A stretch of DNA of 64,000 nt. Origin: Octopus sinensis (taxonomy: Eukaryota). The stretch covers positions 172,422,001 to 172,486,000 of the forward strand of contig NC_042997.1 of the NCBI RefSeq assembly GCF_006345805.1, written 5' to 3'. The notes beneath the pieces were generated by a model. That model did no database searches. It saw only the letters and a list, made by a program, of their open reading frames with translations, and was not told where the DNA came from. A program made the translations under genes and the position numbers. Shown piece by piece: positions 200 through 64,000 of the stretch. Position 1 is the stretch's first letter. The number at the start of each line of letters is the position of its first letter.

Positions 200-828
200 T
201 ATATATATATGTGTTTACATACATATATTTACATCTGTCTGTGTGTGTCTTACAATCATGCTAAGTTTGTCTCTGGACTATATTAAAAGTACACCTGTCT
301 GTGAAATACTCAGCTCTGTACACTACAATACGGCGAATAGGTAACTTCATTGATATAGTTGTTTAACACCAGACCAGCACTGACCAGAGACACCTGTTAA
401 AACCATTATCCAATATTGTATTTTGTTTGTCTTTTTGATTTAAAAAAAAGTTGAGTTTGATTTGAGAGAGATTTGGGTGCTATTTCTTGCCAGTTATTGA
501 AATACGTAGAAGCTTGTTCACAAATAGAGCAGGACAACTAGGGCCTTCACTTATTAAAGCCAACATATATCTCTGCCATATGTATTTGCATATATATATA
601 TATATACACACACACACACGTATATATACATGTGTGTGTGCTGTGTAATATATATATGTATGTTTAGAGGTTCAGTCTGTAAAATCACATCTATGCTATT
701 CAATGGGTCCTCCATTTTGTTGTGAGACACGAGAAAAGACATACATGTATACATACATACATATATATATTTAAACAGATTAGAAAATATATGCTCAGAT
801 GTATGAACACAAACACACCTGTGTTTAT

Positions 829-1482: not shown

Positions 1483-1842
1483 TACTCTCTTTTACTTGTT
1501 TCACTCATTTGACTTTGACCATGCTGGAGCACCGCCTTTAGTCGAGCAAATCGACCCCAGGACTTATTCTTTGTAAGCTTAGTACTTATTCTATCGGTCT
1601 CTTTTTGCCGAAACACTAAGTTATGGGGTATGTAAACACACCAGCATAGGTTGTCAAGCAATGTTGGGGGAACAAACACATACACACAAACATATACATA
1701 TACAGTTTCCGTCTACCAAATCCACTCACAAGGCTTTGGTCAGCCCGAGGCTATAGTAGAAGACACTTGCCCAAGGTGCAACGCAGTGGGACTGAACCCG
1801 GAACCATGTGGTTCATAAGCAAGCTCCTTACCACACAGCCAT
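1483..1842 (-). mobile_element. tRNA-derived SINE group 1, near full length
   Basis: Near-identical to copies at 41198, 55963 and 63517; tRNA-like head at the right end on the minus strand. Confidence 0.9.
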
Positions 1843-2139
1843 CTATTGATATATATTATATAAGAAAAGAGAAAAGAATAAATGATTATCTTATGAACTT
1901 CATTAGCTTACAACTGTTTCCACTATATGTGGTGAACTCAGTTGAGTGCCTGAGTTTCATTATAACTTCAAACATGAAATGCTCTTCACCACATCTTACA
2001 GTGGAAATAGCTGTAAACTAATAATGTTTCTAAGATAATTGTTTAGTCCTTTGTCATCGTTTTTCTTATTACCACTCTATACTCGACTAACACTTTGTTT
2101 AGAGGTGTACATATATTGTGTTCTACACCAGGTTATTAG

Positions 2140-2621: not shown

Positions 2622-3477
2622 TACATAGTTTAAACAAATGAGTGTATATATATGTACATAAATATGTGCAAGCACATAAATGCAAAACAAGGTGGAGTAT
2701 ACAGCACCGCAAAATCAAAGGCAGACTTAAATGTAAAGTTTTAAATTTATTGAATCAGTTATGATAAAGTCAATGGTCATGCAGTTAAATTCACTTCTCA
2801 GTCAAATAATTTTGGATGCAGGTCTACTGCACTGCAATAGAAATGAATCCAAAACAGTAGATGACACTTGCACCATTGGCAGATATTATCTACTACAGCC
2901 TTGGGCCAACCAAAGCCATATGAGTGAATTTGGTTGATGGATACTGAAAGAAACCCGTTTTGTGTGTGTCTTCACTTCTGTGTACTATGAAAGTTGCAAG
3001 CTATGAGAGGTGTTATTGTTATCACTTCTGTCAAGTGATTGTCTGCTAGTTTTGTGCCTTCAAAGATGTGTGCAAAACAGATCAGGATTTATGGCAAGAA
3101 AGTATCTGGCTGTAAAACAGTGCCTCATCCCATATCAGCCTGGAAAAATAGTAAGCTAGCTGTCAGCTCCTCTGTTTCTCTTTTCACAAGGAAAATGCCT
3201 GTCATGTGTCACCTTCTACTGTTTGTTTTTACATATGCTTTCCCACGCTAGCATGAGTTAGGTAAATGTGTGATTGAAGCATTTGTTTCAGAGTTGTGTG
3301 CCCTTCCTGACGTCAATGCTGACTTGTTTTCCACACAGCTTTGAATGCAAGAAGGGAATGGGCTATTTATTGACAAAAGAAGTGTCAACAAGAATACTGT
3401 GTAAATGTCATGATTTTCATATGAGTGGTAGGTTTAAATGAACACAGATACATGTATACACACATCTATTTATCTAA

Positions 3478-3626
3478 GTAGGTATGGCTGTGTGGTAAGA
3501 AGCTTGCTTCCCAACCACATGGTCCCAGGTTCAGTCCTACTGTGTGACACCTTGGGCAAATATCTTCTACTATAGCTTCTGGTCAACCAAAGCCTTGTGA
3601 ATAAATTTGGTAGACAGAAACCCATC

Positions 3627-3670
<44 letters not shown>

Positions 3671-4075
3671 CGAAATCCACTCACAAGGCTTTGATTGGCC
3701 CGAGGCTGTAGTAGAAGACACCTGCCCAAGGTGCCATGCAGTGGGACTGAACCTGGAACCATGTGGTTGGGAAGCAAGCTTCTTTTATTCATTCAGTTGA
3801 CCACAAGAGGCTTACAAAGAAAGGAAGCTTCTTACCAAACAGCCATTCCTGTGCTTATATATATATGTGTGTGTTTGTGTCTGTCTGTCCCTACCTCCCA
3901 TTGCTTGACAACTGATGTTGGTGTGTAACTTAGCGGTTTGGCAAAAGAAACCGATAAAATAAGTACTAGGCTTACAAAGAATAAGTCCTGACATGAATTT
4001 GTTCAACTAAAAACCCCTTAAGGTGGTGCTCCAACATCGCCACAGTCAAATGACTGAAACATATAAAGAAGTAAA
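3478..4075 (+). mobile_element. SINE group 1 with an opposite-strand SINE head (about 3670-3850) nested in its (TA)n middle
   Basis: Head 3478-3627, (TA)n 3628-3668, inverted head, then tail ending GACTGAAAC...AAAAGAA. Confidence 0.8.
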
Positions 4076-5039: not shown

Positions 5040-5360
5040 TTACACTGGTCTCTTACGTTGATGAGAAATCACCTCAATACACCACAACATTTGAACTTTT
5101 CTGAACAATATTTTGTATTTTCTGCTTTTTCCTATTGTCATTCTTGTCCACCTCTGTCCAGCCATCACCATGATTGACTGCTAGCCATTAAAACCGTCTT
5201 TTTTTATTGTCTCTCTGTTTGTTTTCTCATGTACCTTTCTGTTGAAGAACGTAGACTCGAAATGTAAAAGGCTTTCTGACCTTCCCGAGCATTAAACTAA
5301 TACACCTGTTTGTTGTTTACACACCTGTCTTCATCTTTTGATTTTTGTAAATTCCAACTA
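5040..5360 (+). mobile_element. Penelope-like 3' terminal repeat with hammerhead-like motif
   Basis: CTTT-CTGTTGA-A-GAACGTAGACTC-GAAAT-GTA-AAAG at 5235-5270, then a tail shared with 18555, 23401 and 57725, ending in (TA)n. Confidence 0.55.
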
Positions 5361-5380
5361 ATATATATATATATATATTT

Positions 5381-5755
5381 TCTTTAACTTGTTTCAGTCA
5401 TTTGACTGTGCCCATGCTAGAGCACTGCCTTAAAATGTTTTAGTTGAAGAAATCAATCCCAGGACTTATTCTTTGTAAGTCTAATACTTATTTCATTGGT
5501 CTCTTTTGCCAGATCACTAAGTTATGGGGGCGTAAGCTCACAGGCATCAGTTGTCAAGCAATGGGGGTGGGGCAAATGCAGACACACACACACAAAAATA
5601 TATACAGTAGGCTTCTTTCAGTTTCCATCTACCAAATCCACTCAAGGCTTTGTTGACATGAGGCTACAGTAGAAGATTCTTGCCCAAGATGCCACACAGT
5701 GGGACTGAACCTGGAACAATGTAGTTGGGAAGCAAAGTTCTTACCACACAGCCAT
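5381..5755 (-). mobile_element. SINE group 1, older copy
   Basis: Colinear with 41198-41585, with CpG decay. Confidence 0.85.
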
Positions 5756-13726: not shown

Positions 13727-16582
13727 TGTGTCCTTGGAGAAATGTAACTGAAAGCTAGACCAGTGCCTTGCTGGGATCCCCGCAAATAGCATAATTGCTG
13801 AGGAGGGGAGACTGATGTTGATAGATAGGCTGTGTCCTTGGAGATATTGTAACTGAAAGCTAGACCAGTGCTTTGCTGGGGTCCCCACAAATAACATAAT
13901 TGCTGAGGAGGGGAGACTGATGTTGATAGATAGGCTGTGTCCTTGGAGATATTGTAACTGAAAGCTAGACCAGTGCTTTGCTGGGGTCCCCACAAATAAC
14001 ATAATTGCTGAGGAGGGGAGACTGATGTTGATAGATAGGCTGTGTCCTTGGAAATATTGTAACTGAAAGCTAGACCAGTGCTTTGCTGGGGTCCCCACAA
14101 ATAACATAATTGCTGAGGAGGGGAGACTGATGTTGATAGATAGGCTGTGTCCTTGGAGATATTGTAACTGAAAGCTAGACCAGTGCTTTGCTGGGGTCCC
14201 CACAAATAACATAATTGCTGAGGAGGGGAGACTGATGTTGATAGATAGGCTGTGTCTTTGGAGATATTGTAACTGAAAGCTAGACCAGTGCTTTGCTGGG
14301 GTCCCTGCAAATAACATAATTGCTGAGGAGGGGAGACTGATGTTGATAGATAGGCTGTGTCCTTGGAGATATTGTAACTGAAAGCTAGACCAGTGCTTTG
14401 CTGGGGTCCCTGCAAATAACATAATTGCTGAGGAGGGGAGACTGATGTTGATAGATAGGCTGTGTCCTTGGAGATATTGTAACTGAAAGCTAGACCAGTG
14501 CTTTGCTGGGGTCCTGCAAATAACATAATTGCTGAGGAGGGGAGACTGATGTTGATAGATAGGCTGTGTCCTTGGAGATATTGTAACTGAAAGCTAGACC
14601 AGTGCTTGCTGGGGTCCCTGCAAATAACATAATTGCTGAGGAGGGGAGACTGATGTTGATAGATAGGCTGTGTCCTTGGAGATATTGTAACTGAAAGCTA
14701 GACCAGTGCTTTGCTGGGATCCCTGCAAATAACATAATTGCTGAGGAGGGGAGACTGATGTTGATAGATAGGCTGTGTCCTTGGAAATATTGTAACTGAA
14801 AGCTAGACCAGTGCCTTGCTGGGGTCCCCGCAAATAGCATAATTGCTGAGGAGGGGAGACTGATGTTGATAGATAGGCTGTGTCCTTGGAGATATTGTAA
14901 CTGAAAGCTAGACCAGTGCTTTGCTGGGGTCCCCACAAATAACATAATTGCTGAGGAGGGGAGACTGATGTTGATAGATAGGCTGTGTCCTTGGAAATAT
15001 TGTAACTGAAAGCTAGACCAGTGCTTTGCTGGGGTCCCCACAAATAACATAATTGCTGAGGAGGGGAGACTGATGTTGATAGATAGGCTGTGTCTTTGGA
15101 GATATTGTAACTGAAAGCTAGACCAGTGCTTTGCTGGGGTCCCTGCAAATAACATAATTGCTGAGGAGGGGAGACTGATGTTGATAGATAGGCTGTGTCC
15201 TTGGAGATATTGTAACTGAAAGCTAGACCAGTGCTTTGCTGGGGTCCCTGCAAATAACATAATTGCTGAGGAGGGGAGACTGATGTTGATAGATAGGCTG
15301 TGTCCTTGGAGATATTGTAACTGAAAGCTAGACCAGTGCTTTGCTGGGGTCCCTGCAAATAACATAATTGCTGAGGAGGGGAGACTGATGTTGATAGATA
15401 GGCTGTGTCCTTGGAGATATTGTAACTGAAAGCTAGACCAGTGCTTTGCTGGGGTCCCTGCAAATAACATAATTGCTGAGGAGGGGAGACTGATGTTGAT
15501 AGATAGGCTGTGTCCTTGGAGATATTGTAACTGAAAGCTAGACCAGTGCTTTGCTGGGGTCCCTGCAAAAACATAATTGCTGAGGAGGGAGAGGAGACTG
15601 ATGTTGATAGATAGGCTGTGTCCTTGGAGATATTGTAACTGAAAGCTAGACCAGTGCTTGCTGGGGTCCCTGCAAATAACATAATATGCTGAGGGGGGAG
15701 ATGATGTTGATAGATAGGCTGTGTCCTTGGAAATATTGTAACTGAAAGCTAGACCAGTGCTTTGCTGGGGTCCCCACAATAACATAATTGCTGAGGAGGG
15801 GAGACTGATGTTGATAGATAGGCTGTGTGTCTTTGGAGATATTGTAACTGAAAGCTAGACCAGTGCTTTGCTGGGGTCCCTGCAAATAACATAATTGCTG
15901 AGGAGGGGAGACTGATGTTGATAGATAGGCTGTGTCCTTGGAGATATTGTACTGAAAGCTATAGACCAGAGCTAGACCAGTGCTTTGCTGGGGTCCCTGC
16001 AAATAACATAATGCAGGGAGACTGATGGAGAGGGAGATGATGTTGATAGATAGAGGCTGTGTCCTTGGAGATATTGTAACTGAAAGCTAGACCAGTGCTT
16101 TGCTGGGGTCCCTGCAAATAACATAATTGCTGAGGAGGGGAGACTGATGTTGATAGATAGGCTGTGTCCTTGGAGATATTGTAACTGAAAGCTAGACCAG
16201 TGCTTTGCTGGGGTCCCTGCAAAAACATAATTGCTGAGGAGGGGAGACTGATGTTGATAGATAGGCTGTGTCCTTGGAGATATTGTAACTGAAAGCTAGA
16301 CCAGTGCTTTGCTGGGGTCCCTGCAAATAACATAATTGCTGAGAGAGGGAGACTGATGTTGATAGATAGGCTGTGTCCTTGGAGATATTGTAACTGAAAG
16401 CTAGACCAGTGCTTTGCTGGGGTCCCTGCAAATAACATAATTGCTGAGGAGGGGAGACTGATGTTGATAGATAGGCTGTGTCTTTGGAGATATTGTAACT
16501 GAAAGCTAGACCAGTGCTTTGCTGGGGTCCCTGCAAATAACATAATTGCTGAGGAGGGGAGACTGATGTTGATAGATAGGCT
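13727..16582. repeat. Tandem array, 27 units of 105 bp
   Basis: Unit TGTGTCCTTGG...GATAGATAGGC starts at 13831, 13936 and 14041 (period 105); 27 units counted; about 46% GC; no CpG in the consensus. Confidence 0.98.
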
Positions 16583-17917: not shown

Positions 17918-18656
17918 TATGTATATCTTAATTGTTTCAGTCATTTGACTGTTGCCATGATGGGGCACTGCCTTGAAGGGTTTTAGTCAAACAAATTGAC
18001 TTCAGGGCTTATTTTTTTATGCCTAGTATTTATTTTATCTGTCTCTTTTGCCAGTCTGCTAAGTTAGAGGAACATAAATATACCAACACTAGTTGTCAAG
18101 CAGTGGTGGTGGTGGTAAACACTGAATTGAAGACATATGCATGCATACACACACACACACAATAGATGCATGCATACATACACACATAAGAAACAGATAT
18201 TCCCTATATAGAATACACTCAGTAGTGCTCAAGAGATTTAAACTTGGGTGGGTAGAGAAGTAAATGAGGGGATAAACAAGCTAGACAGATCAGTATATAA
18301 AGTATATTAAATACATGAAATACAAAAAAAATGTATATATATTTACGTACGTACATACATACATATAAATGATGGCCTTCTTTCAGTTTCTGTCAACCCA
18401 ATATATTCATGTTTTGGTCAGCCTGTGGCTATAGCAGAAACACTTGCCCAAGGTGCCAATCAGTGGGATACTACACAGCCATGCTTGTGCCTTTGAACTA
18501 TTAATCCTTACACATTTTTTTCTCTCTCTGTTTTTTAATTTTTTTTTCCCAAGGTCAAACTAATACACCTGCTTGTTGTTCTTTCACCTGTCTTTGTCTT
18601 TTGTTTTCTGTAAATTTTGAACTATATATATAATTATTACTATAATAAAAAGGAGG

Positions 18657-19039: not shown

Positions 19040-19645
19040 CATCATCATCATCGTTTAGCGTCCGTTTTCCATGCTAGCATGGGTTGGACGGTTCAACTGG
19101 GGTCTGTGAAGCCGGAAGGCTTCATCAGGCCTAGTCAGATCTGGCAGTGTTTCTATGGCTGGATGCCCTTCCTAACACCAACCACTCCGTGAGTGTAGTG
19201 GGTGCTTTTTACGTGCCACCCGCACAGGTGCCAGACAGAGCTGGCAAACGGCCACGAACGGATGGTGCTTTTTATGTGCCACCGGCACGGGGGCCAGGCG
19301 AGGCTGGCAACGGACACGAATGGATGGTGCTTTTTACGTGCCACCGGCACGAGGCCAGTCGGGGCGGCGCTGGCAACGGTCAGGAACGGATGGTTCTCTT
19401 ACATGCCACCGGCACTGGTAACACATCTGCAATTTCCATTGATCGATTTCGATTCTGATCCTCACTTGCCTCAACAGGTCTTCACAAGTAGAGTTTTGTG
19501 TCCCAAGAAGGGAAGGTATGCATACGTAGGCTGGCTCCATCCCATGTAGAAGGCCATGGGTTATGGTCTCACTTGTCCTGCCGGGTCTTCTCGCGCACAG
19601 CACACTTCCAGAGGTCTCGGTCTCTAGTCATTTCCTCGGTGAGAC

Positions 19646-23042: not shown

Positions 23043-23400
23043 TATGTTTCAGAGCTTAATTATTTACTTTTTATTTTTGAGCTTAATGGGAAAGTTAGTT
23101 ATTTAACTAAACCAATTCTAAATTCTTAATTATTTAAAAAATCAATTGAAACACATGCTTTCTATCTTTCACTTGTTTCATTCATTGGACTGTGCCCATG
23201 CTGGGGCACTACCATAATTGGTTTAGTTGAATATATTAACCCTAGTGCTTACTTTTATAAGTTTGGTGCTTTTTCTATCAGTTTGTTTTGCTGAACTACT
23301 AAGTTGCTGGGATGCAAACAATCACCAATTATCAAGTGGTGGGGGAACTAACACAAAGAGAAACACATGTATAATGTGTTTATATATATATATATATATA

Positions 23401-23515
23401 TAAACTCGAAATGTAAAAGACTTTTTCTATTCCTGAGCATTATACTAATACATCTGTTTGTTCTGTACACCACCTGTCTTCGTCTTTTGTTTTTTTTTCG
23501 TGAACTCTCCCCCCA
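23401..23515 (+). mobile_element. 5'-truncated Penelope-like terminal repeat between (TA)n tracts
   Basis: Starts CTC-GAAAT-GTA-AAAG; tail matches the 57725-57880 copy. Confidence 0.55.
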
Positions 23516-24284
23516 TATATATATATATATATATATGACAGGCTTCCTCACAATTTCCATTTACCACATTCACTTACAAGGCATTGGTTGACCCTTGGCT
23601 ACAGTAGAAGATACTTGCCCATGTAGTTGCAAAGCAAGCTTCTTAACCACACAACCCTGTCTGTGTCTTTGCCTTAATATAATAGTGATTGGAGAGTTAT
23701 TGATACCTGGATTAGCTGTAATAATTCTTGTACAGTTCTGCAACTTGTTTGTTTATTTGGTGTTCTTCTGAAGTAATATGGCTGCAGATTACTTTAGCTG
23801 ATATACTCTTACAACTTTGTTTCTTGTAAATGTAAACTCTTTAATTAACTTCAGGAACTTTGTGTGTTTCTATCATGTCATCATTGCATGTCTCTTGGAA
23901 AAACTGAACTGCTGTATGTTCTGGCTTTAAGCACCTCTTAGAGTTAATGCACTGAAACATTGCAGTGTACTGCTGCTTATTCTAGACAAATAGGTTTTAA
24001 CTCAGCATTGTGTTGATTAGATTTTAGCTATTGTTACATGCCAATCCTATGCAAATCAGTTGTCACAACCTCTTTCTATTGGTCAGTAAAAATAAAATGT
24101 GCACATTATGACATAAAATGTGGAGAATTTCGGAAAGTATCCCTCTGTCAAAAGTGAGTTACTTTGGTTCCTGAGCACTCAAGTGCACATGCACAGAGCT
24201 GAGCATACTTGTTTTCTGCACTGTAAAGCATAACTCATCACTGCAACGTAACAAAATGCTTGTTAATTATAGAGGGCAGTTATT

Positions 24285-26774: not shown

Positions 26775-29020
26775 ATTGAACACTAATGGACAGAGAAGAC
26801 CTGTGCATCACTAGCACCCTCTTTCAACAGTGGGACATTTACAAGGTGTCGTGGATGCACCCATGTTCCAAAAAGTGGCATCCTCCTAGACTACATCATT
26901 GTCCGTCATCGAGATATGGGCGATGTCCTCCATACTTACGCAATGCATGGATCAGATTGCTGGATGGACCACAACCATATCCACTCCATGCTTAGAATCA
27001 ACATTTGACCCCCTAGCCAACAGCATCAAAGTGACTGAACACCACAAAACTATGATCCTGAGAACGGTGGCCTCTTTTAAGATCAGCTTGCCATCAAATT
27101 GGATACTCTCCCACTCCCCGATCCTACCTTGGTAAACTAAAAGGAGCTAGATGATATATGGGACAAACATATCTCCCTGATCTCCTCGGTTGCAACCTAA
27201 CAACTAGGACACACTAGACGTCGCAATCCTGACTGGTTTGATGAATCTGCTAATGAGATCCTCCCTCTTCTCAGAAATAGAAACCGGGCTCATGATGCCT
27301 ACCTCTCGAGTAGGTCCAACGCACACCTCCAGAATTGGAAAGATCTTCACTTGGAATGCCCGAGCAGACTTAGGCAGATTCAGAACACTTGGTGGAAGAA
27401 CAAAGCTACAGAAATTCAACGTTTTGCAGATGAAAATAAGATCCACGAGTTCTACACTGCAACCAAATCCATGTACAGTCCATCCTCCAATCATATCAAT
27501 CTGATACGATCTTCATACAGCAACACTCTCTACAAGGAAAAGACCCAGATCCGTGACAGATGGGCAGAACACTTCAACTCCTTGTTGAATACGATAAATC
27601 CTACAGACACCACACTGATTGATGAGATCCCTCATCTCCCTCCCCTTCCTGAGCTGGATACGGAACCCTCTCTCGTGGAAATCCATACAGCCCTCTCCTA
27701 CTTAAAAAACAGGAAATCACCTGTATCAGATGGTGTGTTGGGAGAGATCTATAAATATGGGGTCCTGTTCTTGTCCAGCGTCTTCATCTGATTATCCTCT
27801 ACTGTTGGAAAAGTGTCTTGATCCCTCAACGCTGGAAACACGCTGACATAATCACCATCTTCAAGAAGAAGGGAGATCGATCAGACTGCAACAACAGCAG
27901 AGGTATTTCGCTCCTGGATGTTGCAGGAAAGGTCTTGGCATGCATCCAGCTCTCTCGACTTCTTGGGCCACTTCGTCGAAGGAATCCACCCAGAGTCTCA
28001 ATGCGGTTTTAGAGCTAACCGTAGTACTATTGACATGGTCTTCGTCTTCCGCTTCCTGTTAGAGAAGTGCCAAGAACAGCAGTATGATGCCTTGTTTGCC
28101 TTTATTGACCTAACTAAAGCTTTTGATACTATTAGCTACCCACTACTATGGCATGTCCTGCAGAGGTATGGATGGCCTCCTAAGCTTCTTGCCATGCTAT
28201 GCCAGTTCCATGAGGGCATGCAAGCATGGGTGACATTAGGTGGCGATCAGTCTGACTACTTTAACATTCAAGTTGGTGTTAAACAAGGCTGTGTCCTGGC
28301 CCCTGTCCTCTTCAATGTGTTCCTTGTGGCTGTGACGTTACTATCTTGCTACGACCTCAAAACCGAAGATGGCATCCCAATTCACTATTGCCATAATGGC
28401 AGTCTCTTCAACTTGAGGAAACTAAAATCACTAACAAAGACAGTCCACCACTCTCTTTGAATTACAATATGCTGATGACTGTGAAGCTCTCACCCATGAA
28501 CCAGCCAGCCTTCAGCAGAATCTAGACGTGTGCAGCGCCTATCATCAAGCTGGCTCCAGGTTAACACCAAGAAAACAGAGATCCTTCAATGCTCCAAAAA
28601 TGGTTCACCCTCTGTGATTCTTTCAATCCAAGACAACTACCTAAAGAACACAAAGAAATTCACCTATTTGGGTTGCATTATTTCAGAAATTCAGAATCGC
28701 ATCTATCTTGCCTCCTCCACTCTTCTCAAGGATAGGGTCTTCCTTAATCGTGATCTGAATCTCTCCATGAAAATCGAGGTTTATCGTGTTGTTGTGGTTT
28801 CCATGTTTCTGTATTCCTCAGAAACCTGGACACTTTATTGTCATCATGTCAAACCCCTCAAATCCTTTCATACATGCTGTCTCCAACGCATTCTTCATTT
28901 GACCTAGAAGGATGAGATCCCACATACAGAGGTCCTGAGATGAGCGAAATTGACCTGCATCAAATGCGTGATCCTCAAATGTCAACTGCACTGGGTGGGG
29001 TATGTTATCAGGATGCCGGA
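26775..29020 (+). mobile_element. Decayed RTE-clade LINE (endonuclease C-terminus plus reverse transcriptase), truncated at both ends
   Basis: ORF pieces: LCITSTLFQQ..WMHP..KWH (APE end), KKKGDRSDCNNSRGISLL, PESQCGFR, FIDLTKAFD, GVKQGCVLAP, ELQYADD (about 28459), FTYLG, LYSSETW, WVGYVIRMP; many stops and frameshifts. Confidence 0.93.
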
Positions 29021-29661: not shown

Positions 29662-29810
29662 TATGGTCCCATATATGGACACAATATGGTCCCATTATTC
29701 AATCGGATTTTGGTAATTTGTGCCTTTCGAAACACGTGTAGAATGAAATAAAACGATTTCTGTTCAATCTGCGTTCAGCTCCATTTCTTCAATTCACCAA
29801 TAATGTTTTA
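29662..29810 (+). mobile_element. Short Penelope-like tail between (TA)n tracts, 3' half of a hammerhead
   Basis: GAA-ACACGTGT-A at 29729-29740 (palindromic helix III, GUA triplet); no CUGANGA upstream. Confidence 0.4.
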
Positions 29811-37126: not shown

Positions 37127-37627
37127 CAGTGCTCCGCAACCTTTTTTTCACTTGTGGTACACTTAATTCTTTTCAAAATTCGGTGGCACACCTGAGCTAA
37201 AAATATAACTAAAAACATAGGAAAAAAATTACGTTTATATATTTGTTTTGCAAGATTCTTGATGTGAAGTCGCGTGTTGAAACAAATGTTGTTGTATTTA
37301 GGAATGGCCATGTTGCCAGTTTAGCCAATAAAAACACACGCACTATATATTTGGTGTTTGGTGTTAATTTGCTTCAGCTTTATTTATTTTATTTTTTACA
37401 TTAATCTTAATCTTATTTCGGCCAGAGTTCTTTCGTCACACTTCTGTGACCTCATCAGTGGTCCTTTGCTTTCTTCTTTCTTATTTGTGTGTCTCTCCTT
37501 ACTAACAGTCAGCCATTTTGTATTCCTATTGTATGTGTCTTTATTTGTGTATCAGGTTACACTACAGCACACATAGCATCACCTTGTGGCATGCCAGTAT
37601 GCTATGGCATACTGTTGCAGAGCACTG
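37127..37627. mobile_element. hAT/Charlie-type MITE
   Basis: TIR CAGTGCTCCGCAAC / GTTGCAGAGCACTG; TSD ATCTAGAG / GTCTAGAG. Confidence 0.8.
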
Positions 37628-41197: not shown

Positions 41198-41585
41198 TAC
41201 TCTTTTACTTGTTTCAGTCATTTGACTGCGGCCATGCTGGAGCACCGCCTTTAGTCGAGCAAATCGACCCCAGGACTTATTCTTTGTAAGCCCAGTACTT
41301 ATTCTATCGGTCTCTTTTGCCGAACTGCTAAGTGACGGGGACGTAAACACACCAGCATCGGTTGTCAAGCAATGCTAGGGGGACAAACACAGACACACAC
41401 ACATATATATATACATATATACGACAGGCTTCTTTCAGTTTCCGTCTACCAAATCCACTCACAAGGCATTGGTCGGCCCGGGGCTATAGCAGAAGACACT
41501 TGCCCAAGATGTCACGCAGTGGGACTGAGCCCGGAACCATGTGGTTGGTTAGCAAGCTACTTACCACACAGCCACTCCTGCGCCT
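41198..41585 (-). mobile_element. SINE group 1, full length, young
   Basis: Intact tRNA-like head, CpGs retained, near-identical to 63517-63890. Confidence 0.92.
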
Positions 41586-42179
41586 TATGTTGGTAACAAC
41601 TTTCTCAATTTTTGTAAAAGGCAAAATGTATAAAGCTGAAGTAGGTTTCTCATTCTTACTATGGTATATTTTTTTGAGAAAAATTTCTTTCTATCTTCAA
41701 TCATAAAATCTGTTTTTTCTCACCAAATTGTGTTAATAAGTTATTTCTATTACAAATTATTTCCTTATTTTATTGAGATAATGTGTTTACTTTTATTTTT
41801 CAAATTTAATATTGAAGTACAATCATTTTGTCATACAGTTTAATATTTTTTTAAAAAAAGAAAAGATATTTTATCTTGGTGGTGGAAATTTGTAGTATTA
41901 AAGTTGCTACAGAAGTTCAAAGATCCCCAAATATTCAATAACATATTTTGATAGGACACAAACAAATTTTTCTCAGAAATAATACATTGAATTCAGATTT
42001 AAGTAAAAATAATATCACTGGCTATACCCATGGAAATTCCAAGGTTATTTTTGAAAACTGCAAGATGGTTGAAATGTACAGAAAATCATGGAGTATGTAA
42101 TTTCTTTTCAAATTGTAATTTTTATTGAAACATTTGATTCTATAGATGGCATACAAGTTCATATAGGTAATATTAATGT

Positions 42180-46239: not shown

Positions 46240-46700
46240 AATCATATAATGATGGTATTCAGTCAATCTTCTGGATTTTCTGTATTGAATGTTCTTGTCA
46301 GTCCATTTCAATTTGATTTAAATCCCAAGAGTGTGCTGTATTTTGTTACTTTTGATAAATCCCTTCATTATTCTTGCAGTATGCTTCAGGTATTTGCCAT
46401 ACTTTCCACAATTAGTCCAAATAACTTCTGACATGTGGAAGCATAGTGTTTTCCAAGATCTTTAGATAGGCAGTACTATTCTTGATATACTTAATTTGGT
46501 GTATGGAACCAACACTCTTTCCAGACAGATTGCCTCCAGCCTTAACATTACCACCATAATGTTTATGGTGAAATTCTTTTACATAACATTGAATATTCCA
46601 GTCATCAGAGACAAATTGAATTTGTACTCCTCCAGCCACAAAATTCTGTTTTTTTTACCAGTTTAGTGACTCCCAATTCATTTTGCTCTTGGCTAAACTG
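46240..46700 (-). mobile_element. Tc1/mariner transposase relic (DDE region)
   Basis: Minus strand: EYKFNL (ESKFNL-like), KHYGGNV..GKSVGSIH..YLKILENTMLPH, KHTARIMK and DLNQIE (PDLNPIE-like), with frameshifts. Confidence 0.75.
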
Positions 46701-49789: not shown

Positions 49790-50550
49790 GGAAGAGCCAT
49801 TACCATGCCAGACAAAACGCTTAGCAGCATATCTTCCAGCTGTTTTATGTCCTGAGTTCAAATTCAACCATGGTTAACTTTGCCCTTCATCCTTTTGGGG
49901 TTGATGAAATAAGTATCAGTTAAGGAGTGAGAATGTAATCGGCTAACCCCTTCCCCTCAAAATTTCAGGCCCTGTGCCTGTAGAAGAAAAGGTTGTTATT
50001 ATTACTATTATTGTAAGGCGGTGAGCTGGCACGCCAGGTAAAATGCTTAGTGGCATTTCATCCATCTTTACGTTCTGAGTTCGTTGGGGTTGATAAAATA
50101 AGTACTATTTGAGCGCTGGAGTTGATGTAATCGACTGATAACCTACCCCGAAATTGCTGGCCTTGTGCCAAAATTTAAAACCATTATTGAACCACATGGT
50201 TCCGGGTTCAGTCCCACTGCATGGCACCTTGGGCAAGTGTCTTCTACTATATCCTCGGGCTGACCAAAGCCTTGTGAGTGGATTTGGTAGACGTAAACTG
50301 AAAGAAGCCCGTTGTATATATGTATGTGTGTGTTTGTGTGTCTGTGTTTGTCCCCCTTCCCAGCATCGCTTGACAGCCAATGCTGCTGTGTTTACATCCC
50401 CGTAACTTAGCGTTTCGGCAAAGAAGACCGATAGAATAAGTACTATGCTTACTAAGAATAAGTCCTGGGGTCGATATGCTCGACTAAAGGCGGTGCTCCA
50501 GCATGGCCGCAGTCAAATGTCTGAAACCAGTAAAAGAGCAAAAGAGTAAA
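49790..50550 (+). mobile_element. SINE cluster: group-2 fragments then group 1 (50186-50550)
   Basis: Core motifs as above. Confidence 0.8.
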
Positions 50551-53375: not shown

Positions 53376-54769
53376 CACGCTCATATGAGAAAGACATTTG
53401 CTGTGAGATTTTTACTCCTTTTGTTGCCTAGTGTCTTTCATTTATTTTATTTCCCTTTATTGATCACTCATCATTTCTCTCTTTCTCTCTCGCTCCTTCA
53501 TTTCTTTTAGTCTTTCTTTCACGTTGTCTTTCTTGTCTCTTGATTTCTGTTTCTTCCCTTCCATTCTGTCTCTCTTGCCTCATTATTTCTATCACTTGTA
53601 CTTTCTTCTTGCTCTCCTTCTCTCTCTCTCAATCAGTTTATCTCTCAAACAAGAACTCTGAACAACTCACTTGTCAATTGTCAGACTGTATATTGTGTAC
53701 TGAAGACAACTAAAGACTGGTTTCTAATGATAGACTATACCTGGTTCTGATAATTTCATGTGATTGCTGTTTCCTTACAACTTTCTTTCTCTCTACTGCT
53801 GTCATAGAGAATGTGTTAAGAAAGAAAGTGATGCACATGTTATTTAATGCTCTAAGGGTTACAGTGGAACGAACAAGAGACCAAAGTGACAGCAGGAGTT
53901 GATTCCATTGATGTAAGATGTCACCTGAAGTGTTTAGGTTGAAGCCAGGGAACTTCTAGGGAACAGAAAACTGTACTAAGTATATATATCCTATGTGTGC
54001 ACTAGTAGAGAAGCAAAAGGAGAACCAGCCGTAGTTCATTTTAATTGATCCTCTAGTAACTGATGGATAGTACATAAATTAAATGAATGCATCTTCTGAT
54101 TTTGATATAAATAATTAGTGAAGCTTTGCAAATGTAGGCACCAGATCTATCATTGGAGATGGAACAAGATTTGTCTTGTGCAATGTTTATGAAGGCATGC
54201 ATATATGTGTGTGTGTATTTGGTATATATAAAAATAATAGTTATGTATATGTATTAATAATAGTGTTATATATCAGCAATAGTTATCATCATCATCATCA
54301 TCCTCTAATATCTGTTTTCCATGCTTGGGTGGGTTGGACAGTTTGACTGGGGTCTGGGAAGCCAGGAAGAGTTATATTTATTAATAATAGTTTTATTTAT
54401 AAATAATAGTTATACATACTTATTGATAATAGTTTTATATACCAATTATAGTTGTGTGTATGTATGTGTGTGTGTTTGGAGAGATATATTATCTGGGTGG
54501 ATACACAGTTAAGATCCAGTTAATGGCTAACCACAATGACCAGTATCTAATGTCTGTGTCTACATTTACTTGTTATTCACTCTGTGAATTCTTCCGATGG
54601 GTAATTCTGTGTTCTCTTCGCTGGACAGTAAAAACTGTCTGGAGTGTATATTTATATTGATAATAATAATAAAGAGTATAGAGATTTGTCCTTCCACAAA
54701 GTTATAGTTATATACAGCATATCATAATGACCTACGTGTGTTTACTTACAACACACACACACACAATCT

Positions 54770-55170
54770 TCAACCACCTGTCATGTTCAATATGCATTAG
54801 GTGTTCATGCTAGTGCAGTTGTCGTGCTTGCATACTACAGCTTATTCCTCTTACACCCACTTTCTCTCTCAGCTCATCTATGCCTTGTCATTGATCCACA
54901 GTAATATTACGCATTCAGCAGATTATGCTCATCTCATTTCGTTTCAACTTTTGCACATCCTCTGCATTTAGCGTCCCTGTCTGACTACCATGCAGCATCA
55001 CAGCTTGTACTCATGCAAAATATAGTCTACTCTTTGCTCTGTGGGAGAATCCCTTTGTTATCAGCATAAGTAGTCACTCCCTGTGCTTCTCACCCTATTT
55101 TCATTCTGTAGTCCACCCTACCCTGAAGCTACTTATATCTCCTAGGTAACAGAACCTATCAATAACTACT
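54770..55170 (-). mobile_element. Highly decayed RTE LINE fragment
   Basis: Minus strand begins VIDRFCYLGD (RTE FCYLGD motif) and continues as a decayed RT C-terminal region. Confidence 0.55.
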
Positions 55171-55479
55171 ATAGAGCCCTTTGAGCATTGCAAAAAGTTT
55201 ACTTTAATGGTCATCTGAAGGCATATTATTCCTTTATTATTACATTTGGAAAATTCTCTATTCACTATCAGCTGACCTTTGATTCCACTACACCTGTTGT
55301 GCAGCCATTGATCACACGGAGTGCACTGTATGGAATTTTTATCTACTCTTTTCTACTTGTCAAGCATGGCAATTTCCCTGATGAAACCAGTCATGTCTAC
55401 TTTTCTACTAAAACTTTAGTTCTTCAGTAATTTTACCCCAAGGCTTTCTTCTTCATCATCATCATCATCATCATCATCC

Positions 55480-55870
55480 AGTGTTTTAAATCCTGGCTTT
55501 GTCCCCGTTAACGGGGGTGGCTAGATCTACCTCAGTGCCATAGCAACCGTTCTCCCTTCCTTCTGAAACCAACCTGCCCAATCTCCTCCACCTGTCCCCT
55601 CCATGTCTTCCTTTGTCTATCTCGCTTTACCACAAACTCAAGCACCCTCCTCAGAACATGCTCCTCATTGCTCCTCAACACATGCCCATATCACTGCTCT
55701 CCATTCGCCCTTGCCAGCTGTTCCCCTCCCCCCCGGATTCCTCCAACCCTAGCATCCCCCTCAGTCCTTCTCAAAATTTCCATTTCTCTCTTCCTCAGAC
55801 ACCATCTCTCACTTCCATATAGCATTGGAACTCTCATACAACTCCTGTAGACCCTTTTCATTTTCAAATC
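55480..55870 (-). mobile_element. RTE LINE 3' fragment (second family)
   Basis: LKMKRVYRSCMRVPMLYGSERWCLRKREMEILRRTE. Confidence 0.8.
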
Positions 55871-55962
55871 ATATATATATATATTTATTTGTACTAGCTC
55901 CTGTGGAGGACTCTTCATTGGGCCTTGGGCCCAACAATGATACTTCATGCATTGAGTTCATA

Positions 55963-56293
55963 TTCTTTTACTTTTTTCAGTCATTTGACTGTAGCCATGC
56001 TGGAACACTGCATTTAGTTGAGCAAATCGACACCGGGACTTATTCTTTGTAAGCCTAGTACTTATTCTATCAGTCTCTTTTGCTGAACCGCTAAGTTACG
56101 GGGACGTAAACAATCAGCATCGGTTGTCAAGCGATGTTGGGGGAACAAACACAGACACAAAAACATACACACACATATATACAACAGGCTTCTTTCAGTT
56201 TCCGTCTACCAGATCCACTCACAAGGCTTTGTTCGGCCCGAGGCTATAGTAGAAGACACTTGCCCAAGATGCCACACAGCCACTCCTGCGCCT
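55963..56293 (-). mobile_element. SINE group 1 with an internal deletion in the tRNA head
   Basis: GCCAC is joined directly to ACAGCCACTCC; the B-box segment is missing. Confidence 0.88.
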
Positions 56294-57105: not shown

Positions 57106-57328
57106 TACAAGTGAGTGGACAAACGAAAGAAAAGGATACTCAACACATTTAGTAGGAGTTACATGTATTATTTAAAACAGCTTGATTCAGTTCTGTGCTA
57201 CTTCAAGTTTCACAGGACTCTGGCAGGGGATCATTCCAGACACCTGAAGAAGTCAGGTTCCCATTACGGGGCCTGTGAAACTTGAAGTAGCTTGAAACCA
57301 AATCAAACTGTTTTGAATAATATATGTA
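57105..57328. mobile_element. Penelope-like inverted terminal-repeat pair with hammerhead-like motif
   Basis: Arms 57160-57216/57272-57328; CTGAAGA at 57244, helix II, GAAAC-TTGAA-GTA at 57277-57289. Confidence 0.55.
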
Positions 57329-57537: not shown

Positions 57538-57724
57538 AATTAATAGTAAAATATCTCTTTGCCTTTACCCATTTAATACACTAGGTAATGTTATTGCATT
57601 GCAATAAAAACACTTGTATTAATAATTGGGTATTCTACCAACAGTATATTGGATAGATATTATCCCTTAGTGGGTTGGATTCACAACCCCTAACTTTCTT
57701 GGAGTTTTTATATATATAATGGGA

Positions 57725-57880
57725 AAGTTTACGAAAATAAACAAAAGATGAAGGCAGGTGGAGTACAAACAAATAAATGTATTAGTATAGCGCTCAGGAA
57801 TAGAAATAGAAAAAGTCTTTTATGTTTCGAGCCTACGCTCTTCAACAGAAAGATACACAGAAAAAAACAAGGAGAGAAAA
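57725..57880 (-). mobile_element. Penelope-like terminal repeat with hammerhead-like motif
   Basis: Minus 57852-57817: CTTT-CTGTTGA-A-GAG-CGTAGG-CTC-GAAAC-ATA-AAAG; flanked by (TA)n. Confidence 0.6.
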
Positions 57881-58320
57881 ATATATATATAGGTGTGTAT
57901 TTACATAATTGTGTGTTAGTAAACCAGTTTGAAGGTGACAAGTTGGTCAGATGATTAGTCGCAGTGTGTGTGTGTGTGTATATATACATATATATATTTA
58001 GCAACTTTTTATTATATGTACATGAATCTGTTATGTACAATTAATCCTCTACTGCAAGGTGTGGTTATACAGCACACAAGAAACCCAGAATATAAATATT
58101 TCTGTCAGAAAAACAAAAGCATTGTTCCTTCAGGAGCAATGTTAACTCAGCCATTTCATTCAATTCATTTCATTCAACAAAGTTTTTATTGTTTGTGTCA
58201 TCATAACAAGAAATGGAAGCATAATATAATGCTTCTATTTGTTCCTTTTTTCCTTTTTCTGTAAATAGAAATCTTATTCACAATCTGCTATGACATAAAA
58301 CGGTTACTGGAATAACTTAC

Positions 58321-62651: not shown

Positions 62652-62715
<64 letters not shown>

Positions 62716-62719
62716 AAGT

Positions 62720-63005
62720 AGGAGGGGTTAGTTCATAGGTGATCTAAACGATTAGGTATGCTAGGTAAGTGCTGTAACGGATTACTGGAGCTCCAAGGTT
62801 GTAGCCGAGGTCATCTTATTGATATATACCATTCTTATTTTTCCGTTTTTTTTTTTTTTACTTTTTTGTCTCTGATGATGGAATATTCCATACTCGAAGA
62901 TATTCCAGAAACAGCTGTAAGATTTTGAATTTCTTCTTGTAATATTGCATATGACTTGAGATCTTTGCCTTGCCTTAATGTTTGACATCCTGTTTAACAA
63001 TTATA
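62720..63005 (+). mobile_element. Short Penelope-like/retrozyme-like element between (TA)n tracts
   Basis: Contains the hammerhead at 62868-62923; flanked by (TA)n at 62655-62700 and about 63005-63040. Confidence 0.55.
62868..62923 (+). ncRNA. Minimal type I hammerhead ribozyme motif
   Basis: Helix I GUCU/AGAU, core CUGAUGA (62872-62878), 8-bp helix II UGGAAUAU/AUAUUCCA, GAAA (62908-62911), palindromic helix III ACAGCUGU, GUA triplet (62917-62919). Confidence 0.7.
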
Positions 63006-63212
63006 CATATGTGTGTGTGTATATATATATGTATATATATGGAAAGGATAATCAATCGACAAACATCGGCCTGTAGACATTCATTTATATCTATTAATTG
63101 ATTACAATCATATGTATAATTGATCCAAATATACGAATGAAATAAGCAAATAAACAAGTAAATAAATAGATAAATAGATAAAAATAAACGAATAAGCATA
63201 AATGAGTAAACA

Positions 63213-64000
63213 AATGCTAAACCCTTATAGCTATTTCTACCATGGGGTTGCCCAATCTTCCAAGTTTTCCACATCACGCCACAATGTCTTACCCTCGTTA
63301 TTTCCCCCAGTAAAATTATAATACATTGTATCTCTCAGGACCTGTGAAAATTACTCCTGGGAGTGACTTTCTTTACCATAAAATGTAATCCCATGGATTA
63401 TGGAAATCACCTTGGAATTGACGTTTTTGACCATTCCTTACTATTTCTATTATTTTATTATTTTACGTTCCTCACATGTTAGATTCCTAACATTATGGTC
63501 CAACCCTCTTTTTTTTCTCTTTTACTTGTTTCAGTCATTTGACTGCGGCCATGCTGGAGCACCGCCTTTAGTCGAGCAAATCAACCCCAGGACTTATTCT
63601 TTGTAAGCCCAGTACTTATTCTATCGGTCTCTTTTGCCGAACCGCTAAGTGACGGGGATGTAGACACACCAGCATCGGTTGTCAAACAATGCTAGAGGGA
63701 CAAACACAGACACACAAACATATATATATATACAACAGGCTTCTTTCAGTTTCCGTCTACCAAATCCACTCACAAGGCTTTGGTTGGCCCGAGGCTATAG
63801 CAGAAGACACTTGCCCAAGATGCCATGCAGTGGGACTGAACCCGGGACCATGTGGTTGGTTAGCAAGCTACTTACCACACAGCCACTCCTCTCCAATGTT
63901 TGTCCAACTTTGTAAAATCCCTGTATATCACTGGCATGATGTGGAAAACTTGGCAGATTGGGCAACCCCATAGTGGAAACAGCCGTAAGAGTTTAGTATT
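63213..64000. mobile_element. Long-TIR fold-back element hosting a SINE; right arm reaches the window edge
   Basis: 63213-63281 is the imperfect reverse complement of 63932-64000. Confidence 0.65.
63517..63890 (-). mobile_element. SINE group 1, full length, young
   Basis: Shares private variants with 41198-41585. Confidence 0.92.

What the first reader, a model, noticed from the sequence alone, without database searches (positions are those of the whole stretch)
62720..63005. Structurally complete minimal hammerhead ribozyme in a non-coding, (TA)n-flanked element
Seen: all core nucleotides (CUGAUGA, GAAA, GUA), helix I 4 bp, helix II 8 bp, helix III an 8-nt palindrome; predicted cleavage after 62919. 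Deviation: U-A instead of the usual G-C closing helix II. Known: such motifs mark Penelope-like elements and non-autonomous retrozymes, and palindromic helix III favours dimeric cleavage. Inferred: together with the motifs at 121, 5235, 23405, 29729, 57244 and 57817, this is a diversified system of short ribozyme-bearing retroelements targeting (TA)n. This is the best candidate here for an under-described system, although Penelope hammerheads as a class are known.
Basis: partly seen in the sequence, partly recalled or inferred. Interest (0 to 1): 0.75.

Follow-up and report, generated by a model that had tools for sequence, protein, structure and literature searches.

The report
Penelope-type hammerhead in octopus repeat
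A complete hammerhead-ribozyme motif really is at 62868-62923, inside one copy of a short octopus repeat whose best-conserved bases are the ribozyme core; it is most likely a leftover of Penelope-like retroelements, a known kind, and probably cuts nothing at this solitary locus.

Summary
The motif is in the sequence exactly as described: GUCU / CUGAUGA / 8-9 bp helix II / GAAA / palindrome ACAGCUGU / UA, cut after 62919 / AGAU. It is rarer than chance. About 1.8% of composition-matched decoy cores give any full motif in this window, and none gives this geometry independently.

The window is octopus DNA. In 88 kb of Octopus vulgaris I found homologous copies of 62860-63005: one head-to-head inverted pair and one single copy. 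Across three independent copies the hammerhead core and cleavage site are 78% invariant, against 33% for the rest (p = 1e-5).

Only the window copy has an intact motif. It has no partner copy for the dimer that its helix III requires. No Rfam hammerhead model matches it, and it carries U10.1-A11.1 instead of G-C.

Of the six other cited sites:
- Three (5235, 23405, 57817) belong to a second ~190-bp family ending at (TA)n. It has a Penelope-style minimal hammerhead-like motif, but with U at core position 6.
- Two (121, 57244) are plain palindromes.
- One (29729) has only a 3' half.

Verdict: a genuine but ordinary Penelope-type minimal hammerhead relic, a new member of a known kind. The "system" reading is partly right. 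Cleavage is untested.

The parts
62654..62718 (.). left microsatellite, (TA)24 followed by (CA)6
62825..62867 (+). T-rich leader just upstream of the motif. It may be part of the repeat unit, because copies of family A2 have a similar T-rich leader (inferred).
62868..62871 (+). helix I, 3' strand GUCU (positions 2.4-2.1)
62872..62878 (+). core C3-A9, CUGAUGA
62879..62907 (+). helix II hairpin. UGGAAUAU pairs with AUAUUCCA (8 bp plus one U.G); the closing pair is U10.1-A11.1. The 5' strand is also part of the 14-nt palindrome AUGGAAUAUUCCAU, which forms a competing hairpin.
62908..62911 (+). core G12-A15.1, GAAA
62911..62918 (+). helix III as the 8-nt palindrome ACAGCUGU. As a monomer it gives 2 bp plus the AGCU loop; between two copies it would give 8 bp.
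62918..62919 (+). U16.1 and A17; predicted cleavage 3' of 62919 (triplet GUA)
   Evidence: hammerhead NUH rule (established knowledge)
62920..62923 (+). helix I, 5' strand AGAU (positions 1.1-1.4)
62924..63005 (+). 3' tail of the repeat copy, homologous to O. vulgaris L003 (both arms) and L002; ends in TA-rich sequence
63002..63040 (.). right microsatellite, (TG)5(TA)n
46483..46625 (-). possible diverged partial copy of the same family. It shares UUUGUCUCUGAUGA-C-UGGAAUAUUC, but has UAAA in place of GAAA and no helix III.
   Evidence: (28 nt, 92.9%, E 1.7e-5). It was not recovered by the HMM built without it.
5197..5388 (+). family A2 copy with a minimal-hammerhead-like motif: CCUUU CUGUUGA A GAAC GUAG ACUC GAAA UG UA AAAGG. 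Its 3' end lies at (TA)n.
23381..23541 (+). family A2 copy, 5'-truncated inside the motif so only ...CUC GAAA UG UA AAAGA is left; (TA)n on both sides
57703..57894 (-). family A2 copy: UCUUU CUGUUGA A GAGC GUAG GCUC GAAA CA UA AAAGA
18506..18649 (+). family A2 copy, 3' part only

Best explanation
The window is octopus DNA. Bases ~62860-63005 (perhaps from ~62825) are one copy of a short, non-coding interspersed repeat, which I call F1. Its ancestral sequence carried a Penelope-type minimal type-I hammerhead ribozyme.

**How such elements work (inferred from published PLE biology, not shown here).**
- The element is transcribed as part of a longer or multimeric RNA.
- Two hammerhead copies pair through the palindromic helix III (ACAGCUGU) to form a double hammerhead.
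- Each RNA is cut 3' of GUA, here after 62919.
- The RNA is copied into (TA)n-rich DNA by the RT/GIY-YIG protein of an autonomous Penelope-like element, starting roughly 80-90 nt downstream of the cut site. This leaves short copies with a common 3' end, 5' truncations and inverted pairs.

**At this locus.** The copy is solitary, with no partner for the dimer and no coding partner nearby. It is best read as a relic that happens to keep the full motif, not as a working ribozyme.

**Wider picture.** A second, more abundant family (A2; 5235, 23405, 57817, 18557) has the same layout but U at core position 6. So two families of PLE-derived short elements populate the (TA)n-rich DNA of this window.
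For: **Shown**
- The motif is complete and rare against decoy cores.
- The organism is an octopus: the LINE RT ORF hits O. vulgaris proteins at 76% identity.
- Homologous copies exist in O. vulgaris:
  - L003 20190-20471 is a head-to-head inverted pair.
  - L002 12395-12230(-) is a single copy.
  - Local alignment to L003 scores 78-86, against 35 +/- 6 for shuffles.
  - nhmmer recovers L002 at E = 0.0019 with a model built without it.
  - The 18-mer CCAGAAACAGCUGUAAGA, allowing up to 3 mismatches, occurs at 4 places in 152 kb. My own estimate of the chance number is about 0.1.
- Across the three independent copies, the hammerhead core blocks are identical in 25 of 32 columns and the rest in 33 of 99 (Fisher p = 1.1e-5). 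The most conserved stretch is 62905-62919, which is G12 to A17.
- Each copy's deviation from the core falls at a different position: U3 in L003, C4 in L002, U12 at 46.6 kb. The majority consensus is therefore a full hammerhead with helix I GUCU/AGAC.
- The geometry fits PLE min-HHRs: helix II 7-8 bp, helix I 4-5 bp, palindromic 15.2-16.2/loop 3, mostly dispersed single copies, some pairs on opposite strands (PMC4209133).
- The cut site is 79-86 nt from the 3' end. In anole Poseidon the cut is 26 bp and the RT start 111-118 bp into the ORF (PMC11167929).
- PLEs prefer (TA)n and occur in Octopus (PMC8557442).
- A degenerate PLE RT (motifs DKG, PKIHK..P.IVS, RYIDD) lies in O. vulgaris L004.
- Family A2 shows the same architecture, with 92% of cells paired and two helix-I pairs changed on both sides.
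Against: - No Rfam hammerhead model matches at E <= 10, even in an 81-nt search.
- Two hallmarks of PLE min-HHRs are absent: G10.1-C11.1 (here U-A) and the extra nucleotide after A9.
- The predicted monomer fold is a competing hairpin at -10.7 kcal/mol. The hammerhead fold is -5.0 kcal/mol, an ensemble fraction of 3e-5. The double hammerhead at -25.9 is not the best dimer, which is -32.8.
- Only 3 independent copies were available, and only one has an intact motif. Helix II is not kept in L002 or at 46.6 kb.
- There is no sequence link to a PLE ORF. No RT or EN lies within about 4 kb upstream or 1 kb downstream, and none of PLE type is anywhere in the window. Homology does not extend upstream of the motif.
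- The alignment is anchored on the conserved blocks, which inflates the conservation contrast somewhat.
- Self-cleavage is untested.
Confidence: 0.68

Rival explanations
1. Chance look-alike inside a foldback or MITE-like repeat. On this view the family is a palindromic DNA element, with L003 as the full-length form and the window copy as a half element. The block CCAGAAACAGCUGUAAGAC would be conserved for another reason, such as a protein-binding site or an E-box-like CAGCTG. The hammerhead likeness would be coincidental and would never have supported cleavage.
For: - L003 20190-20471 is an 81% self-complementary 282-bp foldback flanked by TA-rich DNA.
- The candidate's helix II comes from a 14-nt palindrome plus a direct repeat, which also forms a more stable competing hairpin.
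- U-A at 10.1-11.1 and the lack of any Rfam hit.
- Full motifs arise by chance at about 0.018 per 64 kb, which scaled to my assumed 2.7-Gb genome means hundreds per genome.
- Two other TA-flanked units in the window are plain palindromes.
Against: - Three of the four loci are single-arm copies, not foldbacks.
- Head-to-head inverted pairs are a described PLE insertion signature (PMC8557442).
- The most conserved columns are exactly the catalytic core and cleavage site, which the hammerhead model defines in advance.
- The observed geometry was matched by no independent decoy core.
- A second family in the same DNA has the canonical min-HHR layout, including the extra nucleotide and G10.1-C11.1.
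Confidence: 0.2
2. Active non-LTR retrozyme or currently mobile ribozyme element. On this view the locus, or close relatives, is transcribed, self-cleaves, circularises and is still being mobilised. That would make it a live system rather than a relic.
For: - The window copy keeps every core nucleotide and all three helices.
- The double hammerhead is more stable than two separate monomers, -25.9 against -21.4 kcal/mol.
- Retrozyme-like elements are widely expressed in invertebrates, including a mussel (PMC7229834).
Against: - There is no tandem repeat at or near the locus, and direct tandem copies are what define retrozymes and allow circles.
- There are no loop1-loop2 contacts.
- The sampled copies are old. 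In the three-way alignment 44% of columns are identical in all three copies, and most cores are broken.
- PLE min-HHRs cut poorly even as dimers (PMC4209133), and HHR mutants did not affect PLE insertion in vitro (PMC11167929).
- No expression data were available.
Confidence: 0.07

Closest known systems
Minimal type-I hammerheads of Penelope-like elements (min-HHRs; Cervera & de la Pena 2014, PMC4209133; Lunse et al. 2017, which I could not read)
   Same: Type-I topology. Long helix II (8-9 bp). Short open helix I (4 bp). Palindromic 15.2-16.2/loop 3, which implies dimeric cleavage. Dispersed single copies and inverted pairs. Species-specific, highly variable families. Not captured by the standard models.
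   Different: U10.1-A11.1 in place of the highly conserved G10.1-C11.1. No extra nucleotide between A9 and 10.1. A large loop 2 (11-13 nt). No demonstrated position inside the pLTR of a coding PLE.
Metazoan non-LTR retrozymes (de la Pena lab 2020, PMC7229834; Li et al. 2026 preprint, 10.64898/2026.07.22.740005)
   Same: Short (~150-450 bp), AT-rich, non-coding units that carry one type-I hammerhead with a short palindromic helix III. They are proposed to be non-autonomous derivatives of the PLE pLTR.
   Different: Retrozymes are direct tandem arrays with canonical helices and loop1-loop2 contacts. Here copies are solitary or inverted, helix I is open and 4 bp, and no tandem repeat exists in the window.
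Naiad and Neptune PLEs with (TA)n target preference (Craig et al. 2021, PMC8557442)
   Same: Insertions embedded in (TA)n, so that target duplications cannot be read. 5'-truncated copies and inverted pairs. Present as old remnants in cephalopods, including Octopus spp. Some carry only hammerhead-core-like strings.
   Different: Naiads lack canonical hammerheads. No Naiad or other PLE ORF could be tied to either family here. A degenerate PLE RT lies 1.2 kb from an A2 copy in L004, but a (TA)n tract separates them.
Schistosoma Sm-alpha / Sj-alpha SINE-like elements with hammerheads (as summarised in PMC6765202)
   Same: Short, non-autonomous, high-copy retroposons that carry a type-I hammerhead.
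   Different: Those have canonical, active hammerheads and a pol III promoter. No promoter boxes or activity were examined here.

Membership tests
Hammerhead ribozyme (any type) | Conserved core C3 U4 G5 A6 N7 G8 A9 / G12 A13 A14 / A15.1-U16.1 / H17 | tested here: met
   CUGAUGA 62872-78, GAAA 62908-11, U16.1 and A17 at 62918-19
Hammerhead ribozyme (any type) | Three helices around the core in the right order | tested here: met
   Helix I 4 bp, helix II 8-9 bp. Helix III is 2 bp as a monomer and 8 bp as a dimer. The fold is not the predicted minimum-energy structure.
Hammerhead ribozyme (any type) | Match to a curated covariance model (Rfam hammerhead models) | tested here: not met
   No hammerhead hit at gathering score or at E <= 10 in searches of the whole window, 1.1 kb or 81 nt
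Hammerhead ribozyme (any type) | Site-specific self-cleavage | not testable with these tools
   Needs in vitro transcription and cleavage assays
PLE minimal hammerhead (Cervera & de la Pena 2014) | Helix II 7-8 bp and helix I 4-5 bp, type I | tested here: met
   criteria from PMC4209133
PLE minimal hammerhead (Cervera & de la Pena 2014) | Palindromic 15.2-16.2 and loop 3 (dimer helix III) | tested here: met
   ACAGCUGU 62911-18. It is identical in L003 (both arms) and L002.
PLE minimal hammerhead (Cervera & de la Pena 2014) | Highly conserved G10.1-C11.1 | tested here: not met
   U62879-A62907. A11.1 is present in all family copies. Family A2 does have G-C.
PLE minimal hammerhead (Cervera & de la Pena 2014) | Extra nucleotide between A9 and 10.1 | tested here: not met
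   Absent in the candidate and in L002. Family A2 has it, as A.
PLE minimal hammerhead (Cervera & de la Pena 2014) | Belongs to a multi-copy consensus family with compensatory changes | tested here: inconclusive
   A family exists: 3 independent loci, with the core 78% invariant against 33% for the rest. There are too few copies to test covariation, and helix II is lost in L002.
PLE minimal hammerhead (Cervera & de la Pena 2014) | Lies in the pLTR of an element that encodes RT plus GIY-YIG EN | tested here: inconclusive
   No RT/EN near the candidate and none of PLE type in the window. A degenerate PLE RT exists in O. vulgaris L004 but is not contiguous with either family. The cut-site-to-3'-end distance of 79-86 nt resembles Poseidon.
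PLE minimal hammerhead (Cervera & de la Pena 2014) | Second copy nearby, to form the dimer | tested here: not met
   Single copy in the 64-kb window, apart from a degenerate fragment 16 kb away on the other strand
Non-LTR retrozyme | Direct tandem repeats of 150-450 bp, each with a hammerhead | tested here: not met
   TRF and self-BLAST show no tandem copy. The L003 copies are inverted.
Non-LTR retrozyme | Circular RNA products | not testable with these tools
   No transcriptome data could be reached
MITE / foldback DNA element | Terminal inverted repeats in every full copy, with TA target duplication | tested here: inconclusive
   Only L003 is a foldback. The candidate, L002 and the 46.6-kb fragment are single-arm copies. 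The flanks are TA-rich, so duplications cannot be read.

The most novel reading that the evidence does not exclude
Octopus genomes may carry tens of thousands of dispersed ~180-190-bp non-autonomous elements derived from Penelope pLTRs. There would be at least two families, F1 and A2. They would not be tandem like retrozymes, and they would have kept amplifying after the hammerhead lost canonical features: A6U fixed in A2, and U10.1-A11.1 in F1. That would be natural evidence that ribozyme catalysis is dispensable for PLE-type mobilisation. It would also suggest that part of what is counted as octopus 'SINE/unknown' repeat, and part of its (TA)n landscape, is PLE-driven.
Probability: 0.3. Interest if true: 0.5.

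Novelty: new member of a known kind. Interest (0 to 1): 0.3.

Why it matters
If confirmed, it adds an octopus family to the catalogue of Penelope-type minimal hammerheads. The family has an unusual U10.1-A11.1 closing pair that standard covariance models miss.

It also shows how short PLE-derived units sit in the (TA)n-rich DNA of cephalopods. The sister family with a fixed A6U core change is a natural test of whether hammerhead catalysis is needed for spread.

None of this opens a new class. PLE hammerheads, their dimer mode, their (TA)n targets and PLE-derived non-autonomous elements are all published.

Tried and rejected
**Searches that found nothing useful**
- Rfam at gathering and at E-value thresholds (whole window, 1.1 kb, 81 nt) gave only (TA)n/(TG)n microRNA artefacts and a 12-bit SNORD14 match caused by UGAUGA. 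No D box is present, so a C/D snoRNA is rejected.
- Exact look-ups of two ORFs over and next to the element, and a protein search with the ORF that spans the motif, found nothing.
- The metagenome scan with the block-A pattern gave one unrelated chance hit, L001.
- The genome contigs and viral-contig scans with block B gave nothing.
- The third protein search, with the upstream LINE ORF, gave no further O. vulgaris proteins to fetch.
- Pfam on ORFs between 58.6 and 64 kb gave nothing, and a regex for GIY-YIG and RT motif C found only the LINE YADD at 28468.

**Readings I changed or dropped**
- I first concluded that the element was unique and that the six other sites were not hammerheads. That rested on an exact-core scan, and I revised it after fetching O. 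vulgaris loci and allowing one core mismatch.
- A poly(A) tail on the minus strand could explain the T-run at 62832-62865. I dropped this because other copies lack it and A2 copies have a similar T-rich leader.
- A register shift of the A2 core to UUGAAGA is rejected. U4 would then vary and helix II would be lost.
- Homology between the F1 and A2 tails is only a loose T-rich/TA resemblance, so I do not claim it.
- Collinear homology upstream of the motif between the L002 and 46.6-kb copies consists only of scattered SINEs.

Full report
**What is there.**
- GUCU lies at 62868-71 and CUGAUGA at 62872-78.
- Helix II pairs UGGAAUAU (62879-86) with AUAUUCCA (62900-07). That is 8 bp plus a U.G, with an 11-13 nt loop.
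- GAAA lies at 62908-11.
- ACAGCUGU (62911-18) is an 8-nt palindrome.
- UA lies at 62918-19, with the predicted cut after 62919, and AGAU at 62920-23.
- The closing pair of helix II is U-A.
- The flanks are (TA)24(CA)6 at 62654-62718 and (TG)5(TA)n at 63002-63040.

**Is it more than chance?**
- A type-I descriptor of my own finds one hit in the whole window on both strands, which is this site.
- A first-order Markov null gives 0.016 such motifs per 64 kb, and 0.001 if helix II must be at least 8 bp.
- A stricter control keeps the real sequence and permutes the core letters. Of 5039 decoy cores, 92 (1.8%) give some full three-helix motif. Only one gives a helix II of at least 8 bp with a palindromic helix III, and I infer (not checked) that it is a decoy reading this same site.
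- Taken alone this is suggestive rather than decisive. Scaled to my assumed 2.7-Gb genome, hundreds of loose chance motifs are expected.

**Arguments against a working ribozyme.**
- None of Rfam's hammerhead models matches, at gathering score or at E <= 10, even when only 81 nt are searched.
- The predicted monomer fold is not the hammerhead. A hairpin built on the 14-nt palindrome AUGGAAUAUUCCAU sequesters CUGAUGA at -10.7 kcal/mol, against -5.0 for the hammerhead fold (ensemble fraction 3e-5).
- A double hammerhead of two copies (-25.9) is better than two monomers (-21.4) but worse than the best dimer (-32.8).
- The element has no second copy in the window and no tandem repeat.

**Source organism.** A LINE RT ORF at 27918-28457 hits Octopus vulgaris proteins at 76% identity. 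The window shares many repeats with four O. vulgaris loci that I fetched through those proteins (L002-L005, 88 kb).

**The turning point: the candidate is not unique.**
- Its right-hand 145 bp are homologous to O. vulgaris L003 20190-20471. That stretch is two copies head to head, forming a 282-bp foldback that is 81% self-complementary and flanked by TA-rich DNA.
- They are also homologous to L002 12395-12230 on the minus strand.
- The local alignment to L003 scores 78-86, against 35 +/- 6 for shuffles.
- An HMM built without L002 recovers it at E = 0.0019.
- The 18-mer CCAGAAACAGCUGUAAGA, with up to 3 mismatches, occurs at 4 places in 152 kb. My own estimate of the chance number is about 0.1.
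- A 28-nt match at 46615-46588(-) shares GUCUCUGAUGA-C-UGGAAUAUUC but little else, so I count it only as a possible fragment.

**Conservation pattern in this family (F1).**
- Across the three independent copies, 44% of 131 aligned columns are identical.
- In the hammerhead core blocks, which the ribozyme model defines in advance (62872-84 and 62905-23), 25 of 32 columns are identical. Elsewhere 33 of 99 are (Fisher p = 1.1e-5).
- The most conserved stretch is 62905-62919, that is G12 through the cleavage site.
- Each copy departs from the core at a different place: UUGAUGA in L003, CCGAUGA and GUU in L002, UAAA at 46.6 kb.
- The majority consensus is therefore a complete hammerhead with helix I GUCU/AGAC and U10.1-A11.1.
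- Only the window copy is intact. Helix II is kept in L003, with a bulge, but not in L002.
- Caveats: three copies are too few for covariation statistics, and alignment anchoring exaggerates the contrast.

**Comparison with published work.**
- Cervera and de la Pena (PMC4209133) describe min-HHRs of Penelope-like elements. These are type I, with helix II of 7-8 bp, helix I of 4-5 bp and a palindromic 15.2-16.2/loop 3. They act as dimers, cut weakly, occur mostly as dispersed single motifs from truncated PLEs, and are sometimes paired on opposite strands. They also carry an extra nucleotide after A9 and a highly conserved G10.1-C11.1.
- F1 meets the first group of features and fails the last two.
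- Craig et al. (PMC8557442) report (TA)n as a preferred PLE target, inverted 5'-truncated copies, and PLE remnants in Octopus spp.
- Frangieh et al. (PMC11167929) place the Poseidon cut site 26 bp, and the RT start 111-118 bp, into the ORF. That puts the cut 85-92 nt from the 3' end of insertions.
- In F1 the cut site is 79-86 nt from the TA-rich 3' end. In family A2 it is 94-99 nt.
- A degenerate PLE RT (motifs DKG, PKIHK..P.IVS, RYIDD) is present in L004. I could not link it physically to either family.
- No RT or GIY-YIG remnant lies within about 4 kb upstream or 1 kb downstream of the candidate, and none of PLE type is anywhere in the window.

**The other six sites.** My exact-core scan had dismissed them all. 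That was too quick for three of them.
- Sites 5235, 23405 and 57817, together with 18557, are copies of a ~190-bp family, A2. It has 8 copies in 152 kb, every 3' end abuts (TA)n, and 23405 is 5'-truncated with (TA)n on both sides.
- Allowing one core mismatch shows that A2 carries a textbook min-HHR layout: (C/U)CUUU CUGU-N-GA A GAGC GUAG GCUC GAAA CG U(A/U) AAAG(G/A). It has the extra nucleotide, G10.1-C11.1 and an ACGU palindrome. In the window copies that palindrome reads UG or CA, which I take to be CpG decay.
- Position 7 varies, as expected for N7. Overall 92% of cells are paired, and two helix-I pairs are changed on both sides.
- However, position 6 is U in five of the six copies that carry the 5' half, where A is invariant in active hammerheads.
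- The sixth copy, in L003, reads CUGACAA. That is consistent with a decayed CUGACGA.
- Sites 121 and 57244 are ~170-bp palindromes without a hammerhead.
- Site 29729 has only GAAA-CACGUG-UA.
- A further half motif at 37458-37431(-) has the extra nucleotide and G10.1-C11.1, but a non-palindromic helix III.
- Half motifs with helix II of at least 6 bp number 2 in the window, against a decoy mean of 0.05.

**Interpretation.**
- Most likely (about 0.68), F1 is a short non-autonomous derivative, or a 5'-truncated 3' end, of a Penelope-like element whose ancestor carried a dimer-type minimal hammerhead. The window copy is then a solitary relic that happens to keep the motif.
- The working cycle is taken from the literature and is not shown here. 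It runs: transcription, dimer formation through ACAGCUGU, cleavage after GUA, then reverse transcription into (TA)n by a PLE RT/EN.
- The main rival (about 0.2) is that the family is a foldback or MITE-like element whose conserved block only resembles a hammerhead.
- An active retrozyme-like system (about 0.07) is unlikely without tandem copies.

**Verdict.** Two companion sites are not ribozymes, there is no coding partner, and nothing here is under-described as a class. This is a new member of a known kind and of modest interest. The A6U-fixed sister family is the more curious by-product.

Noticed in passing
window 5197-5388(+), 23381-23541(+), 57703-57894(-), 18506-18649(+); L002 9382-9549; L003 15631-15819(+) and 15927-15799(-); L004 15216-15028(-): Family A2, ~190 bp, 8 copies in 152 kb, with every 3' end at (TA)n. 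It carries a Penelope-style minimal hammerhead-like motif with U fixed at core position 6 (CUGU-N-GA), the extra nucleotide, G10.1-C11.1, a GUAG loop and an ACGU palindrome. The L003 minus-strand copy has CUGACAA instead.
   Followed up: partly
window 37415-37465 (-): Half hammerhead: GGACCA CUGAUGA G GUCACA GAAG UGUGAC GAAA GAAC UC UGGCC. It has the extra nucleotide, G10.1-C11.1 and a 6-bp helix II, but helix III is not palindromic and helix I is bulged. It is single copy and not homologous to the candidate.
   Followed up: partly
window 55-226 and 57160-57328: Two ~170-bp imperfect palindromes (79% and 74% self-complementary), each lying between (TA)n tracts. They look like MITE or foldback elements and have no hammerhead core.
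   Followed up: partly
window 29700-29800 (+): GAAA-CACGUG-UA, which looks like a hammerhead 3' half with a palindromic helix III, inside a unique TA-flanked 164-bp segment. There is no CUGANGA upstream.
   Followed up: no
window, whole: There are 36 clusters of (TA)>=5 in 64 kb, and 12 gaps between clusters are 320 bp or less. Short TA-flanked units are therefore a general feature of this DNA, and they hold unrelated sequences.
   Followed up: partly
window 13727-16582: A 105-bp satellite with 27 copies at 95% identity. It is G-rich on the plus strand (GC skew +0.3) and gives long spurious ORFs on the minus strand.
   Followed up: no
window 27201-28904 (+); 54300-56000 (-): Degenerate non-LTR (LINE) fragments. 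One is an RT with YADD at 28468 and 76% identity to O. vulgaris proteins. On the minus strand there is a LINE-like C-terminal region with a weak PHD-finger hit.
   Followed up: partly
window 1650-2018, 3473-3784, 41347-41703, 50108-50512, 63400-64000 and others: Many copies of an abundant SINE-like repeat, also present in all O. vulgaris loci at 73-89% identity. It is recognisable in translation as ...RLPNPLTRLWSARGYSRRHLPK...GTEPGTMW....
   Followed up: no
L004 17783-16430 (-): Degenerate Penelope-like RT in O. vulgaris (IKPADKGGAVVVW, LPKIHKPNNPGCPIVS, RYIDD). It is cut off by a palindrome plus a (TA)n tract at 16440-16210, and no GIY-YIG part was seen.
   Followed up: partly
L005 about 20114-20040 (-): Another hammerhead-like string in O. 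vulgaris: GAUCAC U CUGACGA GUUGC...GCAAC GAAA CCGGG UU GUGAUU. It has G10.1-C11.1 and a possible 6-bp helix I, but an extra U before C3.
   Followed up: no
window 19201-19415: GC-rich 62-bp tandem repeat, 3.4 copies at 82% identity.
   Followed up: no
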